From positions 496,001-560,000 of the forward strand of contig NW_026782045.1 in assembly GCF_031769215.1 (NCBI RefSeq): a stretch of DNA of 64,000 bases. The letters are read 5' to 3'. The position numbers and the translations under genes were made by a program. The DNA comes from Ylistrum balloti. Lineage: Eukaryota. The notes beneath the pieces are model-generated. The model saw nothing but the letters and a program-made list of their open reading frames with translations. It was not told the origin of the DNA and did not search any database. Shown here in pieces: positions 5,271-61,900 of this stretch. Position 1 is the first letter of the stretch. Every line of letters starts with the position of its first letter.

Positions 5271-5312
5271 CATCATACAGCCGTTTCTCCCTTCAAGGAC
5301 TCATCAGTGGTG
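5271..5312 (-). ncRNA. Degenerate minimal type I hammerhead ribozyme motif
   Basis: Minus strand: CACCA CUGAUGA GUCC-UUGAA-GGGA GAAA C-GGCU-G UA UGAUG. The core boxes and GUA triplet are intact, but the 10.1-11.1 pair of stem II is broken and stem I has a C-A mismatch. Confidence 0.55.
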
Positions 5313-26050: not shown

Positions 26051-29000
26051 TCAATCAAAAGGAAATGACACGTCTTTGTTACTAGCACTCTTCAGATTTT
26101 CTGACTTTTTAAAATCTATTTGAGCATATGATAATGTCGGACAAGCTCCTGGTTCATCAGCAGAAGAATGTCGACTTTTTATTCGAGGGGATTTTGGATC
26201 GTTGCTATCAACGGTCTCTGACGATCCTAAGTCCAATGAAGCATAATGTAACTGTGTACAACCTGGGGGCGTCAGCTGCTGCTGTGAGGATGACTGTTGG
26301 TGGCCAGATTCTAAATTATTCCCCGATGGGTAAGTCATTTGTTCATATGCCCCAGTGAGGTCTGAACAACTATGCCTACTCCTTGGATTGTTAAAGAAAC
26401 TATTCGTGCTAATAGCAGCACATTGAGCAGGTGCCTCGTCAGCAACCGGCAGAGTCATGCATGGCATACTCTTTTGTTTGTGGAGTTCCGAACCCATTGG
26501 ACTTTGTCCATTCCCTGCAGCACTGTTTGTTTGCCCTTCCATTGAGTCACATGACCCCTCTTCTTTCTTTCCATTGGTTGCTTCATCACCTAGTGAAGAC
26601 ACACTCCCCTTCCGCACTGGCGACATTCTAACATTTGCTGCCAATTTCTGGTTATATTGCCCGATTGTTGAAGTACTGGCCTTTCGATTATGAGGTTGTC
26701 TTTCTGTTCCATCATCTGATTTACTGTCGTCAAGTCCTGATAAAGACACAAGACGTTTTATCGTTACCTTGGAAAGTGACCCCTCAATGTCGCATATCTC
26801 ACTACGCACAGGTAAAGGACGAAGGTTGTCCACATCCGACTCGATCAACTCCTCCACTGGATCATCTACAGATTTTCTAGAGTTACTGAAATTTAAACCC
26901 ACATATCCATCATCATCTTCCTCTTCGTGGACAGGAAGTACTGATGTAGCCAGCGACTTAATTTCTAGACGTCTTTCCACAGGTTTGTCATTAGATTTTA
27001 CCAGTTTTCCTGACCTAGTTTTTGGACTATCACATTTTGGTTTATCTGTAGTGTTACTTTCAGGTTTATTAATGCTAGCGTGCTTTATTGCCACTTTTGT
27101 TGAGTTTGGCTGTTCATTTGAAGATTTTGAAACAGTCTTGCTTGACCCAGAACCTGATATATCACTTTCTTCACTGACCTTGCTACTAATGCTAAATTTA
27201 TCAGACTGACCTTGAACAATTTGACTTTTGGCAATGCTTTGGTTAGAGTTATCTTCAATACAATCTTTTTCCATAGATTTTTCAGCAATGTAGGATCGGA
27301 CACGGGTAGGATTTTTAACATCTGCTTCACTTTCCTCGATCTGATGAGTAGATGGATCAAACTCCATATACTGATACGACTCCCCTGCCACTCCTCCTGG
27401 ATTGGTCGGTGTTTTCTCTTGATCCTGATTGGCTAGAGAATTGTCACATGTCTCTCGTTGATTTTCCCCAGATGTTAATGGAGCATGAGTCATATAATCC
27501 TCCATGCTTCCTAACGAGAAAACAACCGATTCTTTATTCTCAGACTTAGAACTTGGAGAAGATTTTTGACTGGAGTCTTTACTTTTCTTGACATCTGATT
27601 GGCTACACTTGATCACATTTTTGTCCGAGGAAACCTCCGGCTCGAAGTCCATGTAATCACTACTAGGAGAGAGTACAACTGGAGCAGATTTAGATGTGTA
27701 TGAGGGGACTGATTCAGGCTTCTTCACTGCCCTGGAAAACTCTGCTGGTTTATCACTTTCTTCAGACAGTGTCATTCCAGGTTCATACACCAGGTAAACA
27801 TCATCTTGAACACTTGTTGTCTTTTGAAATTTGGATTCTGACTTCGGGCTTTGTTTTCCATCTTTTGGACTTATTCTCCCTAACTTTTTACTCTCAGAGC
27901 TTTCTTTTTCTTTCTTCTCTTTTTTATCTGAAGATTTCTTTTCACTTTTGTCACTTTTATGTTTCTTTTTCTTCAGAGAAAATCTCCCCGAGTCAGAACC
28001 TGAGGAGTCTCTGCCACTAGATCCTTTTAAATTACTGTCAACTTTGTCAGAGGAAGCTGGCTGGTAAGGGACATAACTCTCTTCCTCCGATTCCCTACCA
28101 GAACTTGCTGGACTACGACCTTTGACCGAAGGACTGCGTGATCCACCCGATCCTGAATTAAAAGCCACTGGACTGAAGAGAGCTGCTTGGCTTGGAATTC
28201 CCTCAGTTCCATGCGTGGTGCTTCCTGTATGATGCGATGGAACAAATCCCATCGGTTTTTGTACAACATGACCAGATGCTTTGATAATTTTGATGTCTGG
28301 TGAGGATTTCTCCGGTCGACTAGGGCTAATAAAGCCACTTATAGCTGGTGACGAACTTAAACTCTGTGAGGATGAACTACGCGATGTACCACTACATTTC
28401 GAGCCTGCACTTTGGCCTTGACCTCCAATTGACATATCTATGTATCCACTATTTTCAGAGTTTCGATTCATGTTCATATCAACATAATCTGACTGCTGTG
28501 AAGACTTGGAAGATGTTTCTAGTTTACGCAGCGACTCTGAAGAAGAAGCTTTCGAAGATGTGGTGGAAAACCTGCCAAGGGATTCAAACGATCGCTTATG
28601 TAATAATTCTTTTGAAGTTGTACGTACAGATTCAAAGGATCCCATCTGTTTACCCCCACGAGAACTATGACCATAACTGGATGACCTTGGTCTATGACCT
28701 TGCGCATTGTACATTTTTCCAAAACTTGATGCTCGTGGTCTATACCCATAACTTTCACTTGCAGTGCGCGGACGATAAAAATCCAGCTCCATAAAGGAAT
28801 CTGAATCATCAGATTTGATTGATGCACTGTTTGAAGAGGCGTCCATAGGCATATAGGCTGCAGCCTGATTCTTAATTTTCTGAACTATGAGATGTGGAGC
28901 ACTGGAACTGCGGCCATTGTCTGTGACTTTCAGATTAAGTGGAACAGAGGGTTCTGTGACATGAGTGTGTCGATGCATCATCTTGCTAGCTGGTCGACTG

Positions 29001-32000
29001 CCTAGGGAATAAGCTCTTTTGGGGAACTCACCAGACATTGAGTCATCCGACAGATAACTTACAACCTTGGCTGGCTTCAGATCTGCAGCTGATCTTGGAC
29101 TAATGCCTGTTGGAGTCATGGGAAGATAACTCTCACCACCTTTAAACAGAGATATCAACATCATCAGTGTTATTATTTAGTCTTACAGGTGATTTCTTCA
29201 TTGACACAAATTTCTGTCTAGAATTTCCCAATGACAACAAATTTCAAAGGGAACATTTAAAATATGAATGTTTATTGAAAACAGGACAAGTTGGCTTTGC
29301 TGGACCTGTAGTAAATTTACAACCATATACAGTAAAAACAATTAATTGAATAATAATTCTTATAACAAGACAAGCAGAAGATTAGACTGTAGTGTTTCAA
29401 TGACTACGCCGTCACTTTCACCAGACAAATGACCAGTGTGGAGCATACATTCACTGATATTCATAGTGAGCGGGACGGTACGGAATCAATGTACTGTTTT
29501 GACTATACTATAATCCAATGTACATTAAGGTCGAAGATAGTGTGACAAGGAAATGTTTGGAAAAAAACAACAACCAATCATTATAGGGTTGAGCTAGAAA
29601 AAAGTAAAATGTTAAAGTGTGGTTAACATTTCTTGACACCAGTGATGCAAAATTATGTAAGATATAAGATTGTGCTTTTAATTCTGAAGATTTAATTTAC
29701 TTTGTCAGGGATTTCAAATTTGTAAAAAGTCAATAAGAGCTCCTTTCAATACCAAGATAGCATCTGTTTATTAAAATACCAAGTGCAGTTCTAAATGATG
29801 AAATTAAAAAGTTTTTAATGAGTTTTTAGTCTTTATGAATGACAAATATTAAGTCACTTTGATGAGTTTTTAGTCTTAAGGAATGACAAATATTAAGTCA
29901 CTTTGATGAGTTTTCAGTCTTAAGGAATGACAAATATTAAGTCACTTTCATAAGTCACTTTGATGAGTTTTCAGTTTTAAGGAATGACAAATATTAAGTC
30001 ACTTTGATGAGTTTTCAGTTTTAAGGAATGACAAATATTAAGTCACTTTGATGAGTTTTTAGTCTTGAGGAATGACAAATATCAAGTCACTTTGATGAGT
30101 TTTCAGTTTTAAGGAATGACAAATATTAAGTCACTTTGATGAGTTTTTAGTTTTAAGGAATGACAAATATTAAGTCACTTTGATGAGTTTTCAGTCTTAA
30201 TGAATAACAAATCTTAAGAAACTTTTTCTCTACAAATGTCTTACAACTGCCTGTGTCTGTGCATGTTTGGACAATTTAGTAATATTTGCTCAGAAATTGG
30301 GACGATATTCCTGATTTTGCTTACTTTGGGGAAATAAGACACTTTTCACTACAGGAAGTTAAACCCCAGTTTTTTCATATATATTCCAATAAGACATTGA
30401 CAGAACTAAAACGGTTGCAACTTATTTGTTATAATGTACAGTAACTTACTTCCGCCTTCCTTGACTGTGGGGAGAGGCTGACTAGTTGGCGTCATGTTCA
30501 TATCCATGTACCCAGGCTCTTTAGGACCACGTTGTGGAATTGGAACCGACATGGATGATTGTCGGTTTCCATGGTGACCCATCATCATATAGGAGTTGTC
30601 CATTCCTCCTACAACATTATGTCATGCTTTACATAATCTTGACGAGGAATTTGAATATTGGCTTGGGAATTCAAAATTTGAACATTTGAATATTAAATTT
30701 TACATTTAAAAAAACATCAAGAAAAAATAAAGGAAGAAATGATGAGAAAAAATAATATTGTAAAATTGAATATCTAAGTGGGGTTCATATTTTGTGGTTT
30801 TCCAAAAATTAGCATGGATGAATTTTCGCTAAAAAATTCACTTATATTATAATCCCTGTCAATTTTAATATATTTATCATTTCCTGGACATATAAATTCA
30901 TGGATATAGACCACCCACAAATTTAACAGAAATAAATCCACCACAAAAATTACAGATCTTACAGTAATTAGTGAAGGGAGGTAATTCATCCAGTGTTCAC
31001 ACCAATATCAAAAATTCTTGCATCAAAAGTTTTGCCATACTTAGTTTTCTTTCACCAAATCATAAATTCAGGATCCAAATAAAACCGAGTCATAACATTA
31101 GAGGTTAGCTGTTTTCAGATAATCTTACGTTGTCTTTTCCAGATTTGTATAAAATACCTTGCCATTGTATTATGTAACCATTCATAACTTCAAGAAAGGT
31201 TTTGTAGTGCCACCTGATTGATTTCATCAAAACTTGGCCTTCAGTTAAACATTTTTCACCAAATAACATGACCTTAATAACACATTAAGCCACTGACACC
31301 CATAAAATCTGTCACAAAACGTTTCTCCAACATCATTATGGGAATCATTTGCAAGATTAAAAGTTGTGGATTTTTTTAAGCTATTTAATTTTTCATAAAA
31401 AAGTTATTATTTAAATACTAATAAAATATCATTCCAAAGAAATGCATTCTTTCTCTGCATTGTTTTGTGTCCTTATGACCTGTGTGGTGACCTTATGACC
31501 TGTGTGGTGACTTTATGACCTGTGTGATGACCTATGTGGTGACCTTTTGACCTGTGTGATGACCTTGTAACCTCTGTGGTGACCATATGACCTGAGATGA
31601 CCTTATGACCTGAAATGACCTTATGACCTGTGTGGTGACTTTATGACCTGTGTGGTGACCTTATAACCTGTGTGATGACCTTGTGACCTGTGCAGTGACC
31701 TTATGACCTTGGGTATTACCTTTTTCCTGGGGTAGGTTTATAGCCATGTCCATATAGCCTGTATCACTTCCTCCAACACTGCTTCCTAACGAACTGCTTG
31801 GTTTCATCTCAATGTATCCCTCATGCTTGTTGCCCCCAGAAATCATGATTGCATCAGAGCCTACAAAAAGAGGTATTCATTCATAAATTAACTCCGTAGG
31901 TTTTATAAATCTCATCCTCAAATTATTTCCGATAAGGAATCAAATGGACTTATCAATTACCATCATTTAAACTTAAAATATATTTGTAAAATAGATGTGG

Positions 32001-44796: not shown

Positions 44797-45550
44797 TTCT
44801 TCTGTATGTAGATAACGTTATGGAATTCTCAAATTGTCCAATTCACAAAATGAGGTTTCTCTGTTTAGCGATAATCACGGACGCTGGAAATTAGGTGTTG
44901 ATTAAACAAAGTTTCCAAAAGTAGATTTGTTAATAGAAGCATTTTCTCAACCACAAATGTAGCTAATGAACGTGTGAACAAATTAGGTACTGTATTCTCG
45001 TCGATCTGTTCCTTCCATGACGCTAAAACATTTTTTAAAAACCTCAATTGCTATGTATTATGTTTAGAAAAAAAGACAGAAAAGTTGAATTTATTTATAT
45101 AAGTTATCATAAGGTAAAAAATTAAACCAAGATAACAACTGCAAGCCCATCATGAAGTTTCATACAAAATACTTTGAATGAATGAGGTCTGATGTATGGC
45201 CTTCGAGATAATGTGAACCCACAATACGTAAACTTTAATGTTAAGCAGCACGCGATCAATTTTCGGAAATATATAATAGTGATATCTTAAATTCTTCCAT
45301 AACAGTTTGATACAAAATTTATAAATAATGACTGTAATTTTTAAAATTCTTTGCTATATTAAAAAGAAAATGAAAGAGATTTGAGGCGTGTTTGTGAAAT
45401 GACAAGGAATTGATACAAATCATATAGGTGATGAATTTCATTATTCTTTCAAAGTGTTCATCTTTTTCATTTTTTGTATTCTTTGCGGACTGTTGTAAGC
45501 ACATCGAAATCTTGTAAAGAGAATGAAATAAACAAAGATAATAATTCTCT

Positions 45551-48500
45551 TGTTATAACCAAGTACAGATGTGGTGACACTAAAAGGGACGAGGGATTCC
45601 CACGTCAGGACCAAGGACAGATGTGGTGACACTAAAAGGGACGAGGTTACTTTGTCATATCCTAGAGAAAGACGGAGGGATTTCCCTGTTATAACCAAGT
45701 ACAGGTGTGGTGACACTAAAAAGGACGAGCTTTCTTTGTCATACCCACGATGGAGACGGAGGGATTTCCTTGTTAGGACCAAGGACAGATGTGGTGACAC
45801 TAAAAGGGTCGTGGTTACTTTGTCATATCCTAGTTGGAGACGGAGGGATTCCCACGTCAGGACCAAGTACAGATGTGGTGACACTAAAAGGGACGAGGTT
45901 ACTTTGTCATATCCTAGAGGGAGACGGAGGGATTTCCCTGTTAGGACCAAGTACAGATGTGGTGACACTAAAAAGGACGAGGTTACTTTGTCATATCCTA
46001 GTTGGAGACGGAGGGATTCCCACGTCAGGACCAAGTACAGATGTGGTGACACTAAAAGGGACGAGGTTACTTTGTCATATCCTAGTTTGAGAGGGAGGGA
46101 TTCCCACGCCAGGACCAAGTACAGATGTGGTGACACTAAAAGGGACGAGGTTACTTTGTCATATCCTAGAGAAAGACGGAGGGATTCCACGTCAGGACCA
46201 AGTACAGATGTGGTGACACTAAAAGGGACGAGGTTACTTTGTCATATCCTAGAGAAAGACGGAGGGATTCCCACGTCAGGACCAAGTACAGATGTGGTGA
46301 CACTAAAAGGGACGAGGTTACTTTGTCATATCCCAGAGGGAGACGGAGGGATTCCAATGTCAGGACCAAGTACAGATGTGGTGACACTAAAAGGGACGAG
46401 CTTTCTTTGTCATATCCTAGGGGGAGACGGAGGGATTTCCTTGTTAGGACCAAGGACAGATGTGGTGACACTAAAAGGGTCGAGGTTACTTTGTCATATC
46501 CTAGAGAAAGACGGAGGGATTCCCACGTCAGGACCAAGTACAGATGTGGTGACACTAAAAGGGACGAGGTTACTTTGTCATATCCTAGAGGGAGACGGAG
46601 GGATTTCCCTGTTAGGACCAAGTACAGATGTGGTGACACTAAAAAGGACGAGGTTACTTTGTCATATCCTAGTTGGAGACGGAGGGATTCCCACGTCAGG
46701 ACCAAGTACAGATGTGGTGACACTAAAAGGGACGAGGTTACTTTGTCATATCCTAGTTTGAGACGGAGGGATTCCCACGTCAGGACCAAGTACAGATGTG
46801 GTGACACTAAAAGGGACGAGGTTACTTTGTCATATCCTAGTTGGAGACGGAGGGATTCCACGTCAGGACTAAGTACAGATGTGGTGACACTAAAAGGGAC
46901 GAGGTTACTTTGTCATATCCTAGGGGGAGACGGAGGGATTTCCCTGTTAGGACCAAGTACAGATGTGGTGACACTAAAAAGGACGAGGTTACTTTGTCAT
47001 ATCCTAGTTGGAGACGGAGGGATTTCCACGCCAGGACCAAGTACAGATGTGGTGACACTAAAAGGGACGAGGTTACTTTGTCATATCCTAGTTTGAGACG
47101 GAGGGATTCCCACGTCAGGACCAAGTACAGATGTGGTGACACTAAAAGGGACGAGGTTACTTTGTCATATCCTAGAGGGAGACGGAGGGATTTCCCTGTT
47201 AGGACCAAGTACAGATGTGGTGACACTAAAAAGGACGAGGTTACTTTGTCATATCCTAGTTGGAGACGGAGGGGTCAGGACCAAGTACAGATGTGGTGAC
47301 ACTAAAAGGGACGAGGTTACTTTGTCATATCCTAGTCAGGGATTCCCAAGGAGGACCAAGTACAGATGTGGTGACACTAAAAGGGACGAGGTTACTTTGT
47401 CATATCCTAGAGGGAGACGATTTCCCTGTTAGGACCAAGTACAGATGTGGTGACACTAAAAAGGACGAGGTTACTTTGTCATATCCTAGTTGGAGACGGA
47501 GGGATTCCCACGTCAGGACCAAGTACAGATGTGGTGACACTAAAAGGGACGAGGTTACTTTGTCATATCCTAGTTGGAGACGGAGGGATTCCCACGTCAG
47601 GACCAAGGACAGATGTGGTGACACTAAAAGGGACGAGCTTTCTTTGTCATATCCCAGAGGGAGGGATTCCCACGTCAGGACCAAGTACAGATGTGGTGAC
47701 ACTAAAAGGGACGAGGTTACTTTGTCATATCCTAGAGGGAGACGGAGGGATTTCCCTGTTAGGACCAAGTACAGATGTGGTGACACTAAAAAGGACGAGG
47801 TTACTTTGTCATATCCTAGTTGGAGACGGAGGGATTCCCACGTCAGGACCAAGTACAGATGTGGTGACACTAAAAGGGACGAGGTTACTTTATCATATCC
47901 TAGTTGGAGACGGAGGGATTCCCACGTCAGGACCAAGGACAGATGTGGTGACACTAAAAGGGACGAGCTTTCTTTGTCATATCCCAGAGGGAGGGATTCC
48001 CACGTCAGGACCAAGGACAGGTGTGGTGACACTAAAAGGGACGAGGTTACTTTGTCATACCCACGATGGAGACGGATTCCCCTGTTATAACCAAGTACAG
48101 ATGTGGTGACACTAAAAGGGACGAGCTTTCTTTGTCATATCCCATAGGGAGACGGAGGTATTCCCACGTCAGGACCAAGTACAGATGTGGTGACACTAAA
48201 AGGGACGAGGTTACTTTGTCATATCCTAGAGAAAGACGGAGGGATTCCCACGTCAGGACCAAGTACAGATGTGGTGACACTAAAAGGGACGAGGTTACTT
48301 TGTCATATCCCAGAGGGAGACGGAGGGATTCCAATGTCAGGACCAAGTACAGATGTGGTGACACTAAAAGGGACGAGCTTTCTTTGTCATACCCACGATG
48401 GAGACGGAGGGATTTCCTTGTTAGGACCAAGGACAGATGTGGTGACACTAAAAGGGTCGAGGTTACTTTGTCATATCCTAGAGAAAGACGGAGGGATTCC

Positions 48501-48888
48501 CACGTCGGGACCAAGTACAGATGTGGTGACACTAAAAGGGACGAGGTTACTTTGTCATATCCTAGAGGGAGACGGAGGGATTTCCCTGTTAGGACCAAGT
48601 ACAGATGTGGTGACACTAAAAAGGACGAGGTTACTTTGTCATATCCTAGTTGGAGACGGAGGGATTCCCACGTCAGGACCAAGTACAGATGTGGTGACAC
48701 TAAAAGGGACGAGGTTACTTTGTCATATCCTAGAGGGAGACGGAGGGATTTCCCTGTTAGGACCAAGTACAGATGTGGTGACACTAAAAAGGACGAGGTT
48801 ACTTTGTCATATCCCAGAGGGAGAGGGAGGGATTCCCACGTCAGGACCAAGGACAGGTGTGGTGACACTAAAAGGGACGAGGTTACTT
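45551..48888. repeat. 84-bp satellite, about 40 copies, upstream of IRS
   Basis: Unit ccaagtacagatgtggtgacactaaaagggacgaggttactttgtcatatcctagagggagacggagggattcccacgtcagga. It explains the overlapping 28-aa-periodic ORFs on both strands. Confidence 0.98.
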
Positions 48889-49184
48889 CTAGAGTGTGAG
48901 AAATGGTTATGACAACGTACTTCAAACCAAAGGGGTTGAAATCTTCTTAACTATCTAAGGATATCACTTTCCGATACAGACATTGTGTTTCACGACTATT
49001 CATTTGGCTAAGGACAGAATCATACTACCCTGGTTATAAAGTGGCAAATATATTTTACACGAATCCATCAATTGCAAATAATGATAAATGGTATAATTAA
49101 ACAAGAGGCCCGTTGGGCCTGGTCTACAGATTATATATGCTCGGGCGTCCTTAAAAAGACAACTTTCAGGATTCTCCCAGTTCG

Positions 49185-51755
49185 ACAAGGTTATCTCAGC
49201 TTAGCTTGCTATCACAAACAGCAACAGGGATATCCCAACTTAGCTTGCTATCACAAACAGCAACAGGGTTATCCCAACTTAGCTTGCTATCACAAACAGC
49301 AACAGGGATATCCCAACTTAGCTTGCTATCACAAACAGCAACAGGGATCCCCCAACTTAGCTTGCTATCACAAACAACAACAGGGTTATCCCAACTTAGC
49401 TTACAATCACAAACAGCAACAGGGTTATCCCAACTTAGCCTACAGTCACAAACAGCAACAGGGTTATCCCAACTTAGCTTGCTATCACAAACAACAACAG
49501 GGTTATCCCAACTTAGCTTACAATCACAAACAGCAACAGGGTTATCCCAACTTAGCTTGCTATCACAAACAGCAACAGGGTTATCCCAACTTAGCTTACA
49601 ATCACAAACAGCAACAGGGTTATCCCAACTTAGCTTACAATCACAAACAGCAACAGGGTTATCCCAATTTAACTTACAATCACAAACAACAACAGGGTTA
49701 TCCCAATTTAGCTTGCAATCACAAACAGCAACAGGGATATTCTAACTTAGCTTACAATCACAAACAGCAACAGGGTTATCCCAACTTAGCTTGCTATCAT
49801 AAACAGCAACAGGGATTCCCGAACTTAGCTAACAATCACAAACAACAACAGGGTTATTCAGCTTATATACACAAAATCAACAACGCTATTTGTAACAACA
49901 GGGTTATCCCAACTTTCACAAACAGCAACAGGGTTTTATCAGTTGTTTCTGTGTAATCTCTCTCCAATCACAAACAGCAACAGGGTTATCCCAACTTAGC
50001 TTGCTATCACAAACAGCAACAGGGTTATCCCAACTTAGCCTACAGTCACAAACAGCAACAGGGTTATCCCAACTTAGCTTGCTATCACAAACAACAACAG
50101 GGTTATCCCAACTTAGCAGTCACAAACAGCAACCGTGCAAACCCAATCACAAACAACAACAGAGTTATCCCAAACTTAGGACTATCACATTCCAGTACAA
50201 TCACAACAACACAGGTTATCCCAACTTAGCTTGCAATCACAAACAGCAACAGGGTTATCCCAACTTAGCTTACAATCACAAACAACAACAGGAATCCCCC
50301 AACTTAGCTTACAATCACAAACAGCAACAGGGTTATCCCAACTTAGCTTACAATCACAAACAGCAACATGGTTATCCCAACTTAGCTTACAATCACAAAC
50401 AACAACAGGTGTACAACCCAACTTAGCTTGCTATCCATAAACAGCAACAGTGTGTATCCCAAATAAGCGTTCTATCACAAACAACAACAGGGTTATTCCA
50501 ACTTAGCTTACAATCACAAACAGCAACAGGGTTATCCCAACTTAGCTTGCTATCATAAACAGCAACAGGGTTATCCCAACTTAGCTTGCTATCACAAACA
50601 ACAACAGGGTTATCCCAATTCAACTTGCTATCAAAAACAGCAACATGGTTATCCCAATTTAGCTTGCAATCACAAACAGCAACAGGGATATTCTAATTTA
50701 GCTTACAATCACAAACAGCAACAGGAATATCCCAACTTGGCTTGGTAGATATCTTAAGCTGGTTTGCTTTGACAGTCAGCAACAAGGGATTTCTTATATA
50801 CCAAAATCAACAACGCTATTTGTAAATCGGCTTGCTGCGTTTTATCAGTTGTTTCTGTGTAATCTCTCTCCCAGTCAGCAACACGAGTATCCCAAACAGA
50901 CTTCACATTCCAGTCAGCAACAGAGGCTGTGCAAACCCAAACAGCAACACGAGTATCCCAAACGGACTTCACATTCCAGTCAGCAACAGAGGCCGTGCAA
51001 ACCCAAACAGCAACACGAGTATCCCAAACGGACTTCACATTCCAGTCAGCAACAGAGGCCGTGCAAACCCAAACAGCAACAAGGATATCCCAAGTTTGCT
51101 TTTAATCCAAGTCAGCTATGTGGGAATCCCAAATCGACTTGCTATCGTAAACAGCTACATGGTTCGACAATTGCACTGCTCTCGTAGGTAGCAACTGGTG
51201 TACAACCTTAATTAGCTTGCTATCCTAGCAAAGCACGTGTGTACCAAATAAGCGTTCTATCACTAACAACAACAGGAGGTATTCCAAATTAGCTTGCAAT
51301 CACGAACAGCAACAGGGGTATTCCGAATTGGCTTGCTTTCACGAACAGCAACAGGGGTATTCCGAATTGGCTTGCTTTCACGAGCAGCAACAAGAATATT
51401 CTGAATTGGCTTGCTTTCACGAACAGCAACAGGGGTATTCCGAATTGACTTGCAATCACGAACAGCAACAGGGGTATTCCGAATTGGCTTGCAATCACGA
51501 ACAGCAGCAGGGGTGTTCCGAATTGGCTTGCTTTCACGAACAGCAACAGGGGTATTCCGAATTGGCTTGCTTTCACGAGCAGCAACAGGGGTATTCCGAA
51601 TTGGCTTGCTTTCACGAGCAGCAACAGGGGTATTCCGAATTGGCTTGCTTTCACGAGCAGCAACAGGGGTATTCCGAATTGCCTTGCTTTCACGAACAGC
51701 AACAGGGGTATTCCGAATTGGCTTGCTTTCACGAGCAGCAACAGGGGTATTCCAT
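49185..51755. repeat. Compound array: 39-bp subfamily 1 (49185-50745), 66-bp unit x3 (50870-51090), 39-bp subfamily 2 (51260-51755)
   Basis: cacaaacagcaacagggttatcccaacttagcttgctat versus cacgaacagcaacaggggtattccgaattggcttgcttt. Spacer sequences are also duplicated (about 49865/50795 and 50459/51244). Confidence 0.96.
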
Positions 51756-54730: not shown

Positions 54731-55569
54731 TTATTCTTGTGTTTTTCAGGAGTCTTCGTGTAGTTATTTCTTTCGTTCATATTATGTCCTGTTTGTGATT
54801 GAAGAGAGTAGTGATGCTGAATTTTTTATTTTCATTTTTATTCGTTTGTTTTTTGTTTTGTATGGTTTTTCATCTTTCTTATGAATGAGGCGGCCTATGT
54901 GGACTGCATGGCTAACAAATCTCCGAAGATATTATTTTTTAAAAAGTTCATCTCTAATACCAAGTGTTAGTTGCAAAAGTCGTTATAAAATTGTACAACA
55001 ACTGATAAGATACAGCTCCGGTATACTATTTAGTGGTAAACAAAACTATTATATGATATACCACGATTTACTATATATGCTATTTAAAGGTCATTTACTA
55101 CATGTTAAGGTTGAAGGTGAAATCCGTCGAATTAACATTCCTGTAACATTTCCCAATGTGCATTTAGACTATCAGAAATATGATAATTTCTATTACACAC
55201 AATCTGCTGTCAGATATTTCTCCATAAAGGCCTCTCACATAGATGTAGAAATAACAGCACAACAAGAGGCACAACAGGGTTGTATCCCTCGGCTTGTCTT
55301 GTAGTTTATAAATATGATGTCAGCGAAAAAGTTAACTTTGGTAATTATACTGTTCATCCCATACTTCTTTACCGTATGTTGCAAGTGAAATAATAAGTTC
55401 CAGGCCTGCTTAGTTGTTAGTATATGTAGACTTATCTGAACCTTTTAACATTGTATGTAGATCACAATATTCATTTGAACTTGACAGTCCTTTATGTTAG
55501 CATGTCTTCTAAAGGTCACCACCACCACCACCACAACAGCACAGGGCATTCCATGAACTCAAGTTTCCT

Positions 55570-57150
55570 GCGAAACACAAACCATCCTGTACAGTGATTG
55601 AACCACATACCTGGGATCTTTAACTGAGACACACAAAATATCCTTGGCAGTGATTGAACCCCATACCTAGGATCTTTACCTGAGACACACAAACCATCCT
55701 GGACAGTGACTGAACCACAAACCTAGGATCTTTAACTGAGACACACAAACCATGCTGGACAGTGACTGAACAACATATCTAGGATCTTTAACTGAGACAC
55801 ACAAACCATCCTGTACAGTGACTGAACCACATACCTGGGATCTTTAACTGAGACACACAAACCATCCTTAGAAGTGATTGAACCCCATACCTAGGATCTT
55901 TACCTGAGACACACAAACCATCCTGGACAGTGACTGAACCACAAACCTAGGATCTTTAACTGAGACACACAAAATATCCTTAACTGAGACACACAAACCA
56001 TCCTGGACAGTGACTGAACCACAAAAATTTTAACTGAGACACACAACTAGGTTAATAGTGAGGACCTGAACACATTTCTAGGATCTTTAACTACACACAA
56101 ACCACCTGGGATATTTAACTGGACACACTACTCTGAACACACAAAATAATGACAGAGATCTTTACCTGAGACACACACACTAAAGTGATCAATAACTGAG
56201 ACACACAAACTGCTGGACATGTCTTCTAAAGGTCACCACCACCACCTGAGACACACAAACCATCCTTGGACAGTGCATTGAGACACACAAACCCACCACA
56301 AACCTAGGATCTTTCCTGAGACACACAAACCATCCTGTACAGTGACTGAACCACAAACCTGGGATATTTAACTGAGACACACAAACCATCCTGGACAGTG
56401 ATTGAACAAACTAGGACACTGAGACACACTGGCAGTGGAACCCCATCTAGGATCTTTACCTGAGACACACAAACCATCCTGTACAGTGACACACAAACTG
56501 AGACACACAAACCATCCTGGACAGTGATTGAACCCCATACCTAGGATCTCTACCTGAGACACACAAACCATCCTGTACAGTGACTGAACCCCATACCTAG
56601 GATCTTTAACTGAGACACACAAACCATCCAGGACAGTGACTGAACCACAAACCTGGGATATTTAACTGCGACACACAAACCATCCTGTACAGTGATTGAA
56701 CCACATACCTGGGATCTTTAACTGAGACACACAAACCATCCTGGACAGTGACTGAACAACATATCTAGGATCTTTAACTGAGACACACAAACCATCCTGG
56801 ACAGTGACTGAACCCCATACCTAGGATCTTTAACTGAGACACACAAACCATCCTGGACAGTGACTGAACCACAAACCTGGGATATTTAACTGAGACACAC
56901 AAACCATCCTGGACAGTCACTGAACCACAAGCCTAGGTTCTTTAACTGAGACACACAAACCATCCTGGACAGTGACTGAACCACAAGCCTAGGATCTTTA
57001 TCTGAGACACACAAACCATCCTTGGCAGTGATTGAACCACAATCCTAGGTTCTTTAACTGAGACACACACCCCATCCTGGACAGTCACTGAACCACAAGC
57101 CTAGGTTCTTTAACTGGGACACACAAACCATCCTGGACAGTATTTGAACA
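55570..57150. repeat. 56-bp satellite with a scrambled middle
   Basis: Unit aactgagacacacaaaccatcctggacagtgactgaaccacaaacctaggatcttt. Units are broken at about 55975-56500. Confidence 0.93.
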
Positions 57151-57224
57151 ACATAAAGTCTAGCACTGAAATACAGCACTGATCAAAACCAACATTTCTT
57201 AGTCACTTAACAACAAAGTGATAA

Positions 57225-58521
57225 GCGACAGTGAGAGTAAGCTTTGGAGTATTGAGGATGGGTTGAGGACAGCGACAGTGAGAGTAAGCTTTGGAGTATT
57301 GAGGATGGGTTGAGGACAGCGACAGTGAGAGTAACCTTTGGAGTATTGAGGATGGGTTGAGGACAGCGACAGTGAGAGTAACCTATGGAGTATTGAGGAT
57401 GCGTTGAGGACAGTGACAGTGAGAGTAACCTTTGGAGTATTGAGGATGGGTTGAGGACAGCGACAGTGAGAGTAAGCTTTGGAGTATTGAGGATGGGTTG
57501 AGGACAGCGACAGTGAGAGTAACCTTTGGAGTATTGAGGATGGGTTGAGGACAGCGACAGTGAGAGTAACCTTTGGAGTATTGAGGATGGGTTGAGGACA
57601 GCGACAGTGAGAGTAAGCTTTGGAGTATTGAGGATGGGTTGAGGACAGTGACAGTGAGAGTAACCTTTGGAGTATTGAGGATGGGTTGAGGGCAGCGACA
57701 GTGAGAGTAAGCTTTGGAGTATTGAGGATGGGTTGAGGACAGCGACAGTGAGAGTAAGCTTTGGAGTATTGAGGATGGGTTGAGGACAGCGACAGTGAGA
57801 GTAACCTTTGGAGTATCGAGGATGGGTTGAGGGCAGCGACAGTGAGAGTAAGCTTTGGAGTATTGAGGATGGGTTGAGGGCAGCGACAGTGAGAGTAACC
57901 TTTGGAGTATTGAGGATGGGTTGAGGGCAGCGACAGTGAGAGTAAGCTTTGGAGTATTGAGGATGGGTTGAGGACAGCGACAGTGAGAGTAAGCTTTGGA
58001 GTATCGAGGATGGGTTGAGGACAGTGACAGTGAGAGTAACCTTTGGAGTATTGAGGATGGGTTGAGGACAGCGACAGTGAGAGTAAGCTTTGGAGTATTG
58101 AGGATGGGTTGAGGACAGCGACAGTGAGAGTAACCTTTGGAGTATTGAGGATGGGTTGAGGACAGCGACAGTGAGAGTAACCTTTGGAGTATCGAGGATG
58201 GGTTGAGGACAGCGACAGTGAGAGTAAGCTTTGGAGTATTGAGGATGCGTTGAGGACAGTGACAGTGAGAGTAACCTTTGGAGTATTGAGGATGGGTTGA
58301 GGACAGTGACAGTGAGAGTAACCTTTGGAGTATTGAGGATGCGTTGAGGACAGTGACAGTGAGAGTAACCTTTGGAGTATTGAGGATGCGTTGAGGACAG
58401 TGACAGTGAGAGTAACCTTTGGAGTATTGAGGATGGGTTGAGGACAGTGACAGTGAGAGTAACCTTTGGAGTATCGAGGATGGGTTGAGGACAGCGACAG
58501 TGAGAATGACCTTTGGAGTAT
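57225..58521. repeat. 47-bp satellite, about 27 copies
   Basis: Unit gacagtgagagtaacctttggagtattgaggatgggttgaggacagc. It explains the 457-aa pseudo-ORF 57199-58572. Confidence 0.98.
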
Positions 58522-58589
58522 CACAGATGTGTACTTACATACTTCACAAAACACAAAATAATTCCTGTGCAAAACGGATATTAATCACA

Positions 58590-58630
58590 ACATACTCACG
58601 TGTTACCAATAAGAGGGTGTTTCCTTTATT
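58590..58630 (-). terminator. Probable BLOC1S5 polyadenylation site
   Basis: First AATAAA after the stop codon (58630-58625), a CA about 23 nt later (58602-58601), then a GU-rich GTGAGTATGTTGTG element. Confidence 0.6.
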
Positions 58631-58631
58631 A

Positions 58632-58674
58632 TGTCTACTAGTTTCGCCTCTGAAGTTGAGGCTTCATCAGGACA
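58632..58674 (-). ncRNA. Minimal type I hammerhead ribozyme, intact core
   Basis: Minus strand: UGUC CUGAUGA A GCCUC-AACUUCA-GAGGC GAAA C-UA-G UA^GACA. Stem I is UGUC/GACA, stem II is 5 bp, stem III is the palindrome ACUAGU, and the GUA cleavage site falls between 58636 and 58635. Confidence 0.88.
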
Positions 58675-58999
58675 AAATTTATGATGAATTTATCTCCTGA
58701 AGTACTCTCAGGGAGGAAAACTTTCCATTGTGACGTAATATACAATGGACAATACTGTGACTTATAAATATATAATACTTGATAGTAGGATGGTATGAGT
58801 TGAGTGCCTTTAGGAAGGAGGTTAGTTCCTCTCGGGTGTGGGGCCACACGGATCTGACGGATCCGAGGATGCAGGGGCTCCGATATATATACAATCGTCT
58901 CCTTTTGAAGTTCTTTAAAATAATACCTGAATACAGAGCTGCATTTTTTCTTATATCAGAGAGGAAGAAGTCAAATTTACATTTGTTTTGCAATTTTTT

Positions 59000-61900
59000 T
59001 TACTGTGCTGCCAGGTTTGAAGAATTTGTTAATTTGTCCTCTAATTCATTGTAATGTCTATGTAATGTTTTAACTTGTTCTTCAAAGTCTTTATCAATAT
59101 TTTCACATCTCTTCAGCTGTCTGTTTGTATAAACCTCCCAATCCTTGTTTCGTCTTTGTCTGCCTTCCTCTAGAACTGAGCTCTGTAAAACCAGGCAAAG
59201 TGTGTGAAATTATTAATTGACAACTGAGTGAACTCGAAGTGAATATTTCATCCATTTAATTAAGTTCTTAATAGTTTAAAACTGCAATTCACTGACAATA
59301 GACAGACAATAGTCAGACAAAAGACAGAGGCAGAAGATAAATATTATTATATTAGACAGACAACAGACAATAAATATTCTGATAATAGCAACACAACAGA
59401 GTCAGTAGAATTACATAAGACAGACATCAGGCAGACAATGGACAGAAAAAAGATGTAACAGTCAGTATTCAGACAATAGAGAGACAATCCACAGACAATA
59501 GTCAAAAAGTCAAACAAAAAACAGACAATGGACAGAGACTGTAGACAGATATTACTGTTTACAACAGACAACATACAGTCAGACAATAGTAATACAACGG
59601 AGACAGCAGACAGGGTCAATAGACAAACATCAGACAGACAATAGTCAGACTGTAGACAGATATTACTGTTCACAACAGACAACATACAGTCAGACAATAA
59701 ATAGTAACACAACGGAGACAGCAGACAGGGTCAAAAGACAAACATCAGACAGACAATAGTCAGACTGTAGACAGATATTACTGTTTACAACAGACAACAT
59801 ACAGTCAGACAATAGTAATACAACGGAGACAGCAGACAGGGTCAATAGACAAACATCAGACAGACAATAGTCAGACTGTAGACAGATATTACTGTTTACA
59901 ACAGACAACATACAGTCAGACAATAGTAATACAACGGAGACAGCAGACAGGGTCAAAAGACAAACATCAGACAGACAATAGTCAGACTGTAGACAGATAT
60001 TACTGTTTACAACAGACAACATACAGTCAGACAATAGCAACACAACTGAGACAGCAGATAGGGTCAATAGACAGACATCAGACAGACAATAGACAGACAA
60101 TAGTCGGACTGTAGACAGACAAAATCAGACAATAGACATGGTCAGAAAATAGAGTAAACAGAAACACAACACAAAAATAAAGTTAATGGAAAGCCAACAG
60201 AAACTCAATTCACAGACAACAGACCAGGCAAAAGCCAAAACAAAAGAGAAAAATCAACAGAGGCAATAGCAGACAAAATACCAGAAATTGATAAATAAAT
60301 TGTCTGACCAAAAGACAGACAACTGACAGTCAAGACTGACAACAAATAGACAGACAATAGACAGAGACCAACAGACAGACAATATATATAATAGAGAGAA
60401 TTAGACAAGAAAAAGGCAATAAACAAACAACAGAAAGGACAAGTGACAAAAACATGTAACTGCTGAACAATAGACAGAAAAGCAAAATACAAAAAAAAAG
60501 ACACCAGACCAACAACAGTCGGACAAGTGACACTAAATAACAGAAGATGGATGGAAGAGACAAATAGAATCCTTACCTCAACACTGTTTCCTTTTTCCTC
60601 TATTTTGTAGCAGACTTCTGTGGCTACTTTCACTTTGAAATAAACAAAATTCATGTCTTTTTTTAAATCATGGAATCTACATGATATCGCTTTCATAAAA
60701 TATTTTTCTAATTAAATATAAAAATATATCACTGAAACCTAAATTTTTAAGCCATTTTTATGGCATCATGATACAAATCAGCAAAGAAGCCTAAAGTGTT
60801 TATCTCCAAGTATAAACTGAGTCTGTTACACTATCTTTCCCATTAAAACTTAAGCAGAACTGACACTTATTACATCAAAATCATATATTACATATTTACT
60901 GGTTCTGACTTCGTTTTCTGCTGGAAGCTTTAACACTTACATCACTTAATCATTCAATGAAATCGATGTCACTGAGGTAAAATACTAGCCACAATATACC
61001 CCTTGGTTTGAGAGAACTTCTCTTTAGCTCAATCAGTTGAATGTCAGACTAGCAAGACAGGGGTTCTGGGTTGGAATCCTAGCAGAGGTATTGGAACTTG
61101 GAAATAATACTAAGCATTACTTTCACAAACCTTTACAGAAACTTGAGGACGAAATATTCCCTGGATGGGGAGTATGGATCCCTGGTAAAATTTTAGGTGC
61201 AATATGCGCCTTGGTTTGAGAAAATTCCTCTAGCTTGATCATATTAGTAAACTAGAGGTCCCGGGTTTGAATCATAGTGGAGTTAAAAATCATAAACACT
61301 CACACTTGGCTGATACATTAGCAAGATACACTTGCATGGCATCCAAACTTTCTGGCAGCAACGTTTCGTTCATTTTCATGATCTCTTTTGAAATTTTATC
61401 CAATCTCTCCTGTTCCCTGTCACCTCTCTTCTCCTGTACAGACAAAGGATGGACATAAACCATGAATCTTTTAAAATAAAAATAAAAATTACCAACATTG
61501 ATTTGATAAAAACATGGCATCTTACCTCAAACTCTTTGATGAAGTAGTTGATGTGACCTTGTAATACAGGACGATGATCTAACAGTCTGGCATGAAGTTC
61601 AGAAATATCTAAAAAAGAAATAACGTTTTACTTAACAGTTTTAAAATCACACATATCATCATATGCTTATGGTATCAGAGACATTTTGGACTAAAAAATT
61701 TGGCTCATATTTTTCCTTCAGGAATCCTCTATATTTCTTTGTAACTAGACTCATCAAATTTTTGGAAACAGTGCTATGAAATTATTGGCCATTTGTGTAA
61801 ACTGACATCTGATGTATATTGGCATACAACAATACAACACATGACAATGAGGATAACACAGGAATGAATTTTGAAAAGTTCTACAGCTTCAAATGTAATC

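What the first reader, a model, noticed from the sequence alone, without database searches (positions are those of the whole stretch)
58590..59000. Intact hammerhead ribozyme in the predicted BLOC1S5 3'UTR, cutting 5 nt before the poly(A) signal
Seen: on the same strand as BLOC1S5, about 330 nt after its stop codon, lies a complete minimal type I hammerhead (58674-58632). It has CUGAUGA, a 5-bp stem II, GAAA, a palindromic stem III (ACUAGU), a GUA triplet and a UGUC/GACA stem I. I found no AATAAA or ATTAAA between the stop and the ribozyme (only a weak CATAAA near 58682). The first AATAAA begins 5 nt after the cleavage site and is followed by a CA and a GU-rich element at the expected spacing. 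Known: Penelope-like elements carry such minimal hammerheads with palindromic stem III that work best as dimers. An extra A between A9 and G10.1 is tolerated (CChMVd hammerhead). Rodent Clec2 mRNAs have 3'UTR hammerheads that lower expression. Inference: this gene may have captured its 3' end from a Penelope remnant. Self-cleavage would then separate the mRNA from its poly(A) signal or tail, possibly depending on concentration through intermolecular pairing of the ACUAGU palindrome. That would be a ribozyme-gated 3' end on a conserved housekeeping gene.
Basis: partly seen in the sequence, partly recalled or inferred. Interest (0 to 1): 0.85.

Follow-up and report, generated by a model that had tools for sequence, protein, structure and literature searches.

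The report
Penelope-type hammerhead relic after BLOC1S5
The hammerhead ribozyme motif downstream of the BLOC1S5 gene is real, but it is one truncated copy of a high-copy Penelope-type mobile repeat whose lone copies are known to cut poorly or not at all, so it is most likely an ordinary transposon relic rather than a switch on the gene's 3' end.

Summary
On the minus strand, 58674-58632 carries a complete minimal type I hammerhead (HHR): a 4-bp stem I, CUGAUGA, an extra A, a 5-bp stem II with G10.1-C11.1, GAAA, the palindrome ACUAGU, and H17 = A. It starts 326 nt after the stop of a BLOC1S5/Muted gene confirmed by Pfam. The first AATAAA lies 5 nt after the cut site.

It is not a chance match: a relaxed descriptor found 0 hits in 20 Mb of random sequence.

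It is also not specific to this gene. Contigs from three public runs pile up on 58566-58676 at 160-280x depth, against 11x for the flanking single-copy DNA. Their other ends run into unrelated sequence. So the ribozyme and its AATAAA belong to a high-copy dispersed repeat, present here as a ~110-bp fragment with no second copy in the window.

Every feature matches the published Penelope-like-element (PLE) minimal hammerheads. In the tested example single motifs showed no detectable self-cleavage, and dimers cut weakly.

No RNA data covered BLOC1S5, so poly(A) site use remains untested. The "ribozyme-gated 3' end" reading is unsupported and unlikely. A TE-donated poly(A) signal remains plausible.

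This scan had already noted 19 Penelope-type hammerheads elsewhere in this genome.

The parts
58632..58674 (-). Complete minimal type I hammerhead motif (PLE min-HHR type). It has a 4-bp stem I, CUGAUGA, a bulged A, a 5-bp stem II with a 7-nt loop, GAAA, the palindrome ACUAGU in place of helix III, and H17 = A58636. The predicted cut is between 58636 and 58635.
   Evidence: Direct reading. Descriptor scan: 1 hit in the window and 0 in 20 Mb of random sequence. Core alignment to the RAGATH-1 hammerhead model at 14.3 bits.
58566..58676 (-). A ~110-bp fragment of a high-copy dispersed repeat that contains the hammerhead and the AATAAA. Homology to other genomic copies ends at about 58673-58684 on one side and 58566-58584 on the other.
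   Evidence: In read laying, summed contig depth is 160-280 in X2 against 11 for the flanking single-copy DNA. Of 34 X2 contigs, 20 lie only partly on the stretch, with loose ends into unrelated sequence. Some loose ends share sequence, so the family is longer than this copy. There is no second copy in the window.
58625..58630 (-). First canonical AATAAA after the BLOC1S5 stop, 5 nt after the predicted ribozyme cut site. It lies inside the repeat and is nearly invariant among the laid copies.
   Evidence: In one search the only variant in the hexamer is one X1 contig at 58625.
58583..58599 (-). GU-rich run (GUGAGUAUGUUGUGAUU) 26-47 nt after the AATAAA. It is a possible downstream element and also lies inside the repeat.
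   Evidence: Direct reading. No functional test was done.
59000..59182 (-). Last coding exon of BLOC1S5/Muted, with the stop TAA at 59002-59000 and an AG acceptor at 59184-59183.
   Evidence: Translation. Pfam PF14942, 32.9 bits, profile 97-146 of 146.
61299..61609 (-). Two upstream BLOC1S5 exons: about 61609-61523 and about 61439-61299 (Pfam-matched parts only).
   Evidence: Pfam PF14942 at 43.3 and 30.2 bits. ORF listing.
58675..58999 (-). Sequence between the stop and the hammerhead, a putative 3'UTR if the AATAAA at 58630 is used. It has only weak poly(A) hexamer variants. The part 58785-58888 has about 2-3x depth in X2, so it is mildly repeated.
   Evidence: No protein-family, homologue or atlas match for its ORF.
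57224..58521 (.). 47-bp minisatellite (27.6 copies) directly downstream of the repeat fragment. This is context and not part of the ribozyme.
   Evidence: Tandem Repeats Finder.

Best explanation
The motif is a genuine Penelope-like-element (PLE) type minimal hammerhead. It is carried by a ~110-bp truncated copy of a high-copy dispersed repeat, either a pseudo-LTR fragment or a non-autonomous PLE derivative. The copy inserted in sense orientation about 325 nt downstream of the BLOC1S5 stop codon. In its family the ribozyme is thought to process tandem element transcripts, acting as a dimer through the ACUAGU palindrome, possibly helped by the element's protein. Here it is solitary, with no helix III, no loop-loop contacts and no partner nearby, so it is expected to cut little or not at all. 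It is most likely a passenger. The AATAAA and GU-rich run that follow the cut site belong to the repeat and may or may not have been adopted as the BLOC1S5 poly(A) signal. Shown here: the motif, the repeat status and the gene identity. Inferred: PLE origin, low activity and lack of regulatory function.
For: All core and stem features were read directly and are far beyond chance. [quoted passage not shown] It also has the short 4-5-bp helix I. Depth is 160-280 against 11. Dozens of contigs in three runs match only 58566-58676 and then diverge. Variation among copies falls on H17 (A to C or U, never G) and on the stem II loop (indels at 58651-58657), while the core boxes do not vary. Several contigs break homology at 58632-58637, at or near the cut site. 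That same paper says most such motifs occur as single, probably truncated copies, and that the one metazoan example tested (Schistosoma mansoni) gave no detectable cleavage as a single motif and low activity as a dimer. PMC11167929 found that a PLE HHR was protein-assisted and that no RNA-seq reads ended at the cut site. A 2026 preprint reports that Xenopus retrozyme copies overlapping exons lie mostly in 3'UTRs, so this placement is not unusual. There is no second HHR or repeat copy in 64 kb. Predicted homodimer Kd is 3e-7 to 3e-2 M. MFE folds of the native context pair the CCUGA of the core with UCAGG at 58700-58696 instead of forming stem I. The scan holds 19 earlier notes of PLE-type hammerheads in this genome; these are leads only.
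Against: No PLE ORF (RT or GIY-YIG) was found in the window, so the link to PLEs rests on motif architecture and the literature, not on a linked element. No Rfam hammerhead model reaches threshold. The core is fully intact in this copy, which could reflect either recent insertion or selection. Sense orientation and the lack of any earlier canonical poly(A) signal fit the motif being in the mature mRNA. Activity was not measured, and trans partners from the same abundant family cannot be excluded. Depth from contigs is not a copy number.
Confidence: 0.8

Rival explanations
1. Passenger ribozyme with an exapted poly(A) signal. BLOC1S5 transcripts run through the weak upstream hexamers and are polyadenylated at the repeat-borne AATAAA (58630-58625). 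The mature 3'UTR then ends with an essentially inactive hammerhead. The transposon's contribution to the gene is the terminator, not catalysis. This is a sub-variant of the best explanation and differs only on whether the motif is in the mRNA.
For: There is no AATAAA or ATTAAA in the 370 nt after the stop, only GATAAA and CATAAA just before the motif. The AATAAA is followed by ACAC and a GU-rich run at normal spacing. The hexamer is conserved among family copies. Retrozyme copies in Xenopus exons lie mostly in 3'UTRs.
Against: There is no RNA evidence. The only run flagged as RNA (X1) has zero depth over the BLOC1S5 exon and the proximal 3' region. Non-canonical signals closer to the stop could be used instead.
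Confidence: 0.4
2. The hammerhead self-cleaves within BLOC1S5 transcripts, perhaps through intermolecular pairing of the ACUAGU palindrome. This removes the poly(A) signal or tail and tunes expression of the gene.
For: The core is intact, the motif is in sense orientation, and it sits just upstream of the first canonical poly(A) signal. 3'UTR hammerheads in rodent Clec2 genes are an established precedent (Martick et al. 2008, from my own knowledge). Family RNAs may be present in an RNA run at appreciable depth (X1; the library type is only guessed), so trans partners are conceivable.
Against: The arrangement is a family feature of a dispersed repeat, not a gene-specific one. There is no cis partner within 64 kb. 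Predicted homodimer Kd is micromolar or weaker, whereas typical mRNA levels are nanomolar or below; the mRNA levels are from my own knowledge. Single PLE min-HHRs were inactive and dimers weak in vitro (PMC4209133). A PLE HHR left no cleaved ends in RNA-seq (PMC11167929). The native-context fold sequesters part of the core. Stem I is only 4 bp here, whereas most laid copies have G at 58631, which would add a fifth G-U pair. No conservation or expression data exist.
Confidence: 0.06
3. Chance resemblance: the boxes and stems arose by accident in AT-rich non-coding DNA.
For: No Rfam hammerhead model reaches threshold. The stems are short, at 4 and 5 bp.
Against: There were 0 descriptor hits in 20 Mb of composition-matched random sequence on both strands. 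My own analytic estimate, which is no tool result, is about 2e-10 per position. The motif lies in a multi-copy family whose variation spares the core and keeps H17 as A, C or U.
Confidence: 0.02

Closest known systems
Minimal hammerheads of Penelope-like elements (Cervera & de la Pena 2014, PMC4209133)
   Same: Type I topology, a short 4-5-bp helix I, an unpaired nucleotide between A9 and G10.1, a G10.1-C11.1 pair, and no real helix III but a palindrome (ACUAGU) that allows a dimeric active form. It belongs to a multi-copy family and occurs here as a solitary, truncated copy, as most copies do.
   Different: Helix II is 5 bp, against 7-8 bp in Schistosoma and 6 bp in Drosophila virilis. No PLE ORF or pseudo-LTR pair is present in the window. 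A canonical AATAAA directly follows the cut site in this family; I found no mention of this in the papers I read.
Metazoan non-LTR retrozymes (Cervera & de la Pena 2020, PMC7229834; bioRxiv 10.64898/2026.07.22.740005)
   Same: Both are hammerhead-bearing non-autonomous repeats abundant in invertebrates, including mussels. Monomer copies are scattered, and those overlapping exons lie mostly in 3'UTRs (Xenopus). Several contigs break homology at the cut site, as expected if cleaved RNAs are reinserted (suggestive only).
   Different: Retrozymes are defined by tandem units of about 170-400 bp, each with a more canonical type I HHR, which give rise to circular RNAs. Here there is a single ~110-bp fragment, no tandem, and a minimal HHR without helix III.
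Discontinuous 3'UTR hammerheads of rodent Clec2 genes (Martick et al. 2008; from my own knowledge)
   Same: A hammerhead on the sense strand downstream of a stop codon and near poly(A) signals, where cleavage would lower expression.
   Different: The Clec2 ribozymes are full-size, efficient hammerheads with tertiary contacts, split by a long insertion, conserved among orthologues and shown to reduce expression. None of this is shown here, and the present motif is of a weakly active class.
Rfam Hammerhead_1 (RF00163) and other Rfam hammerhead families
   Same: The same catalytic core boxes and type I order of helices.
   Different: It does not reach the gathering score of any of the 4227 Rfam families. 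The best hammerhead alignment is RAGATH-1 at 14.3 bits against a threshold of 56.3, because helix III is absent.

Membership tests
PLE minimal hammerhead (min-HHR) | Conserved core: C3-U4-G5-A6-N7-G8-A9, G12-A13-A14, an A15.1-U16.1 pair, and H17 not G | tested here: met
   CUGAUGA 58670-58664, GAAA 58645-58642, U58637, A58636. Found by the descriptor scan.
PLE minimal hammerhead (min-HHR) | [quoted passage not shown] | tested here: met
   A58663. The trait is listed in PMC4209133.
PLE minimal hammerhead (min-HHR) | A G10.1-C11.1 pair closing helix II | tested here: met
   G58662 pairs with C58646, and the helix is 5 bp.
PLE minimal hammerhead (min-HHR) | Palindromic 15.2-16.2 and loop 3 in place of a stable helix III, allowing a dimeric active form | tested here: met
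   ACUAGU at 58642-58637. Cofolding of two copies forms the 6-bp intermolecular helix.
PLE minimal hammerhead (min-HHR) | Member of a multi-copy consensus family within the genome | tested here: met
   Depth is 160-280 against 11, and dozens of partly matching contigs occur in three runs. Variation is confined to H17 and loop 2.
PLE minimal hammerhead (min-HHR) | Located in the pseudo-LTR of a Penelope-like element (RT plus GIY-YIG ORF) | tested here: not met
   Eight long ORFs of the window, out of 28 of at least 130 aa, gave no RT or GIY-YIG Pfam hit. The ORF next to the motif has no homologue. The literature says most copies are solitary, so this does not exclude PLE origin.
PLE minimal hammerhead (min-HHR) | Self-cleavage at H17 | not testable with these tools
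   This needs in vitro transcription of monomer and dimer constructs.
Non-LTR retrozyme | Tandem head-to-tail units of about 170-400 bp, each with a type I hammerhead | tested here: not met
   There is only one hammerhead and one repeat copy in 64 kb. The adjacent tandem arrays of 47 bp and 56 bp lack the core.
Rfam hammerhead families (RF00163 and others) | Covariance-model score at or above the gathering threshold | tested here: not met
   Searches gave no hammerhead hit. One search gave RAGATH-1-hammerhead at 14.3 bits against a threshold of 56.3.
Regulatory 3'UTR hammerhead (Clec2-like) | Present in the mature or nascent mRNA of the host gene | tested here: inconclusive
   The first AATAAA lies after the motif, but no RNA contig covers the gene.
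Regulatory 3'UTR hammerhead (Clec2-like) | Conserved at the orthologous position in related species | not tested
   Orthologue retrieval was blocked because no stop-free reference of sufficient length exists for the spliced protein. No related genome was reachable.

The most novel reading that the evidence does not exclude
BLOC1S5 mRNA uses the transposon-borne AATAAA and so carries an intact Penelope-type hammerhead 5 nt upstream of it. When family RNAs are abundant (trans dimer through ACUAGU) or the element's protein is present (protein-assisted cleavage, as for the Anolis PLE), the ribozyme cuts. This removes the poly(A) signal or tail and couples expression of a housekeeping gene to transposon activity.
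Probability: 0.04. Interest if true: 0.7.

Novelty: new member of a known kind. Interest (0 to 1): 0.2.

Why it matters
If the ribozyme did act on the BLOC1S5 transcript, it would be an invertebrate counterpart of the Clec2 3'UTR hammerheads and an example of a transposon ribozyme taken over for gene control. As the evidence stands, it is one more solitary copy of a very abundant repeat class. Its main value is as a clean example of how Penelope-type repeats can place a ribozyme together with a ready-made poly(A) signal behind a gene. It is also a reminder that intact-looking minimal hammerheads in bivalve genomes should be read first as repeat copies.

Tried and rejected
1. Rfam at gathering and at permissive thresholds found no hammerhead family above threshold, so membership rests on descriptor and literature criteria.

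2. I guessed from memory that the peptide at 58790-58900 (W-x-H..EEL..FL..LN..HP.IK) was a retroelement RT linker. This was not supported. Pfam gave nothing. HMMER against 1.84 billion proteins gave one unrelated repeat-protein hit. The ESM Atlas gave only noise. The word-indexed search gave no candidate. I dropped the idea.

3. The second CTGATGA..GAAAC match, at 5283-5307, has no G10.1-C11.1 pair and was not found by the descriptor, so I rejected it as chance.

4. Exact-pattern scans of viral and metagenome contigs for the ribozyme gave 0 hits. These collections probably hold no DNA of this animal.

5. The look-up of encoding contigs on three local ORFs found nothing on record. I therefore got no other assemblies or transcripts of the locus.

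6. Poly(A) site mapping failed. The single read-laying run returned one DNA-like run, one sparse run and one possible RNA run without BLOC1S5 coverage.

7. The orthologue test could not be run. The BLOC1S5 exon ORFs (69-83 aa) are too short for the length window of the search for homologous proteins, and I did not type a spliced protein.

8. The chance explanation was rejected (together).
Full report
**What is there.** I read 58400-59200 on the minus strand. The stretch 58674-58632 reads UGUC / CUGAUGA / A / GCCUC-AACUUCA-GAGGC / GAAA / CUAGU / A / GACA.

- This is the order of a type I hammerhead with open stem I.
- Stem I is 4 bp: UGUC 58674-58671 pairs with GACA 58635-58632.
- The 5' core box is 58670-58664, followed by one extra A (58663).
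- Helix II is 5 bp, opens with G10.1-C11.1 and closes a 7-nt loop.
- G12-A13-A14-A15.1 are at 58645-58642.
- In place of helix III there is the 6-nt palindrome ACUAGU (58642-58637).
- U16.1 is U58637 and H17 is A58636. The predicted cut is between 58636 and 58635.

**The gene.** The same strand encodes BLOC1S5/Muted.

- The last exon (59182-59003, stop TAA 59002-59000) translates to a 60-residue C-terminus. It matches Pfam PF14942 positions 97-146 of 146 (32.9 bits, cut-off 26).
- Two upstream exon ORFs match profile positions 3-31 (61609-61523, 43.3 bits) and 29-75 (61439-61299, 30.2 bits).
- A small exon for profile positions 76-96 was not located.
- The hammerhead starts 326 nt after the stop.
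- Between stop and motif there is no AATAAA or ATTAAA, only GATAAA (58694) and CATAAA (58683).
- The first AATAAA is 58630-58625, 5 nt past the cut site. ACAC and a GU-rich run at about 58599-58583 follow it.

**More than chance?** Yes.

- My relaxed descriptor requires CUGAUGA, a 0-1-nt bulge, a helix II of at least 4 bp with G10.1-C11.1, GAAA, 0-6 nt, U-H, and a helix I of at least 4 bp.
- It finds only this site in the window and nothing in 20 Mb of composition-matched Markov sequence on both strands.
- A back-of-envelope product of the constraints, which is my own estimate, gives about 2e-10 per position. That is roughly one chance hit per gigabase-sized genome.
- The only other CTGATGA..GAAAC match (5283-5307) has no G10.1-C11.1 pair and was not found by the descriptor.
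- Rfam does not recognise the motif. There are no gathering-level hits and no hammerhead hit at E<=10 in 3.5 kb. In a 111-nt scan, RAGATH-1-hammerhead scores 14.3 bits (E = 3), aligning the two core boxes with helix III deleted.

**It is a copy of a dispersed repeat.** This is the key result.

- One search found three public runs holding words of 58525-59290. I laid their contigs on that stretch.
- Run X2 behaves like genomic DNA of the same or a very close animal. One contig crosses the last exon and its intron at a flat depth of 11.
- Over 58577-58680 the summed depth rises to 163-283 in X2, 35-54 in X1 and 4-17 in X3.
- Most contigs there match only part of the stretch and then run on into unrelated sequence.
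- Loose ends cluster at 58673-58684 on one side and at 58566-58584 on the other.
- Some loose ends share sequence between contigs and between runs. An example is the letters before 58566 in X1 and X2. The family is therefore longer than the piece present here, and this copy is a ~110-bp fragment.
- The fragment contains the whole hammerhead, the AATAAA and the GU-rich run. The arrangement "cut site 5 nt before a poly(A) signal" is thus a property of the repeat, not of BLOC1S5.
- The hexamer shows a single variant, in one X1 contig at 58625.
- Listed variation within the motif falls where a working hammerhead tolerates it; outside it, other variants lie 3' of the cut site (58631-58616). H17 is A here and C or U in other copies, and G is not seen. 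Indels are confined to the helix II loop (58651-58657). No variant is listed in the core boxes or helix II stems.
- Position 58631 is G in most other copies. That would add a G-U pair and make helix I 5 bp.
- Four contigs from three runs break homology at 58632-58637, at or near the cut site. That would fit reinsertion of cleaved RNAs. With so few break points I treat it only as suggestive.
- Two half-depth X2 contigs (5.8 and 4.3) bridge the 5' part of the motif (58674-58651) into the unique flank up to 58765, one identical to the window and one with 5 differences. I infer that the insertion is probably present on both haplotypes of that individual.
- Contig depth is not a copy number, and the ≥88% identity filter biases the sample towards close copies.
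- Within the window there is no second copy of the repeat or of any hammerhead.

**What kind of hammerhead.** Cervera and de la Pena (2014, PMC4209133) defined the minimal hammerheads of Penelope-like elements (PLEs).

[quoted passage not shown] They also noted a short 4-5-bp helix I.
- All of these are met here.
- They report that most such motifs are solitary, probably in truncated elements.
- In the metazoan example they tested (Schistosoma mansoni), a single motif showed no detectable self-cleavage, and dimers or trimers cleaved weakly.
- For the Anolis PLE (PMC11167929), cleavage needed the element's protein. HHR mutants did not affect insertion, and no RNA-seq reads began or ended at the cut site.
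- Mussel genomes hold thousands of type I hammerheads in retrozyme repeats (PMC7229834).
- In Xenopus the few retrozyme copies overlapping exons lie mostly in 3'UTRs (bioRxiv 10.64898/2026.07.22.740005).
- Earlier first-stage notes of this scan list 19 Penelope-type hammerheads elsewhere in this genome. I used these as leads, not as evidence.

**Can it work here?**

- The isolated 43-mer can form stem I and helix II at -9.6 kcal/mol, near its MFE of -11.0. Two copies cofold through the ACUAGU palindrome.
- The predicted gain is small. Ensemble dimerisation free energies are -2.1 kcal/mol for 43 nt, -6.5 for 91 nt and -9.3 for 201 nt, where any intermolecular pairing counts. These correspond to Kd values of about 3e-2, 3e-5 and 3e-7 M.
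- Typical mRNA concentrations are far below that (my own knowledge).
- In the native context the MFE fold pairs CCUGA of the core box with UCAGG at 58700-58696 in the unique flank, rather than forming stem I.
- With no cis partner in 64 kb, appreciable self-cleavage of a BLOC1S5 transcript is unlikely. It is not excluded. Trans partners from the same family, or a PLE protein, are conceivable.

**What could not be settled.**

- Whether BLOC1S5 mRNAs reach the motif.
- Whether the motif is conserved at the orthologous site. Orthologue retrieval was not possible within the tool rules, and no other assembly of the locus was found.
- Linkage to a PLE ORF. Eight of the window's 28 long ORFs gave no RT or GIY-YIG Pfam hit.
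- My memory-based guess that 58790-58900 encodes an RT-linker remnant failed every test.

**Verdict.** The "Penelope remnant" inference is supported by architecture and repeat status. A transposon-donated poly(A) signal is plausible but untested. The ribozyme-gated 3' end is unsupported, and what is known of this ribozyme class argues against it. This is a new copy of a known kind of element, of low interest unless RNA data show cleavage.

Noticed in passing
window 57224-58521: A 47-bp minisatellite with 27.6 copies at 96% matches begins about 45 nt beyond the repeat fragment. It creates a spurious 457-aa ORF on the minus strand.
   Followed up: partly
window 55568-57141 and 59536-60098: Further tandem arrays: a 56/168-bp satellite downstream of the gene, and a 111-bp x5 array (95% matches) plus 11-bp CAGACA-type repeats inside the last BLOC1S5 intron.
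   Followed up: no
window 26051-29164 (minus): An intronless 1037-aa ORF with no Pfam hit. It is Ser-rich and has several YxxM-type motifs (YMPM, YVDM, YIDM). From memory it resembles the long disordered exon of an IRS/GAB/DOS-type docking protein. There is no exact record in the contig collection.
   Followed up: partly
window 58608-58698: One X2 contig (depth 12.5, shorter side 23 nt) joins 58608 to 58698 and skips 89 nt, including the whole hammerhead. It may be a deletion allele, a paralogue or a repeat artefact, and it remains unexplained.
   Followed up: no
window 58695-58700 with 58666-58671: In MFE folds of the native context, UCAGG(A) in the unique upstream flank pairs with (U)CCUGA of the hammerhead core box. 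This alternative hairpin would compete with stem I.
   Followed up: partly
window 58785-58888: Part of the putative 3'UTR has about 2-3x the single-copy contig depth in X2, so it may be another low-copy repeat. Its ORF has no detectable protein homologue.
   Followed up: partly
window 45441-50426: A cluster of long overlapping ORFs on both strands (up to 396 aa) has only sub-threshold Pfam hits and looks like low-complexity or repetitive DNA.
   Followed up: no
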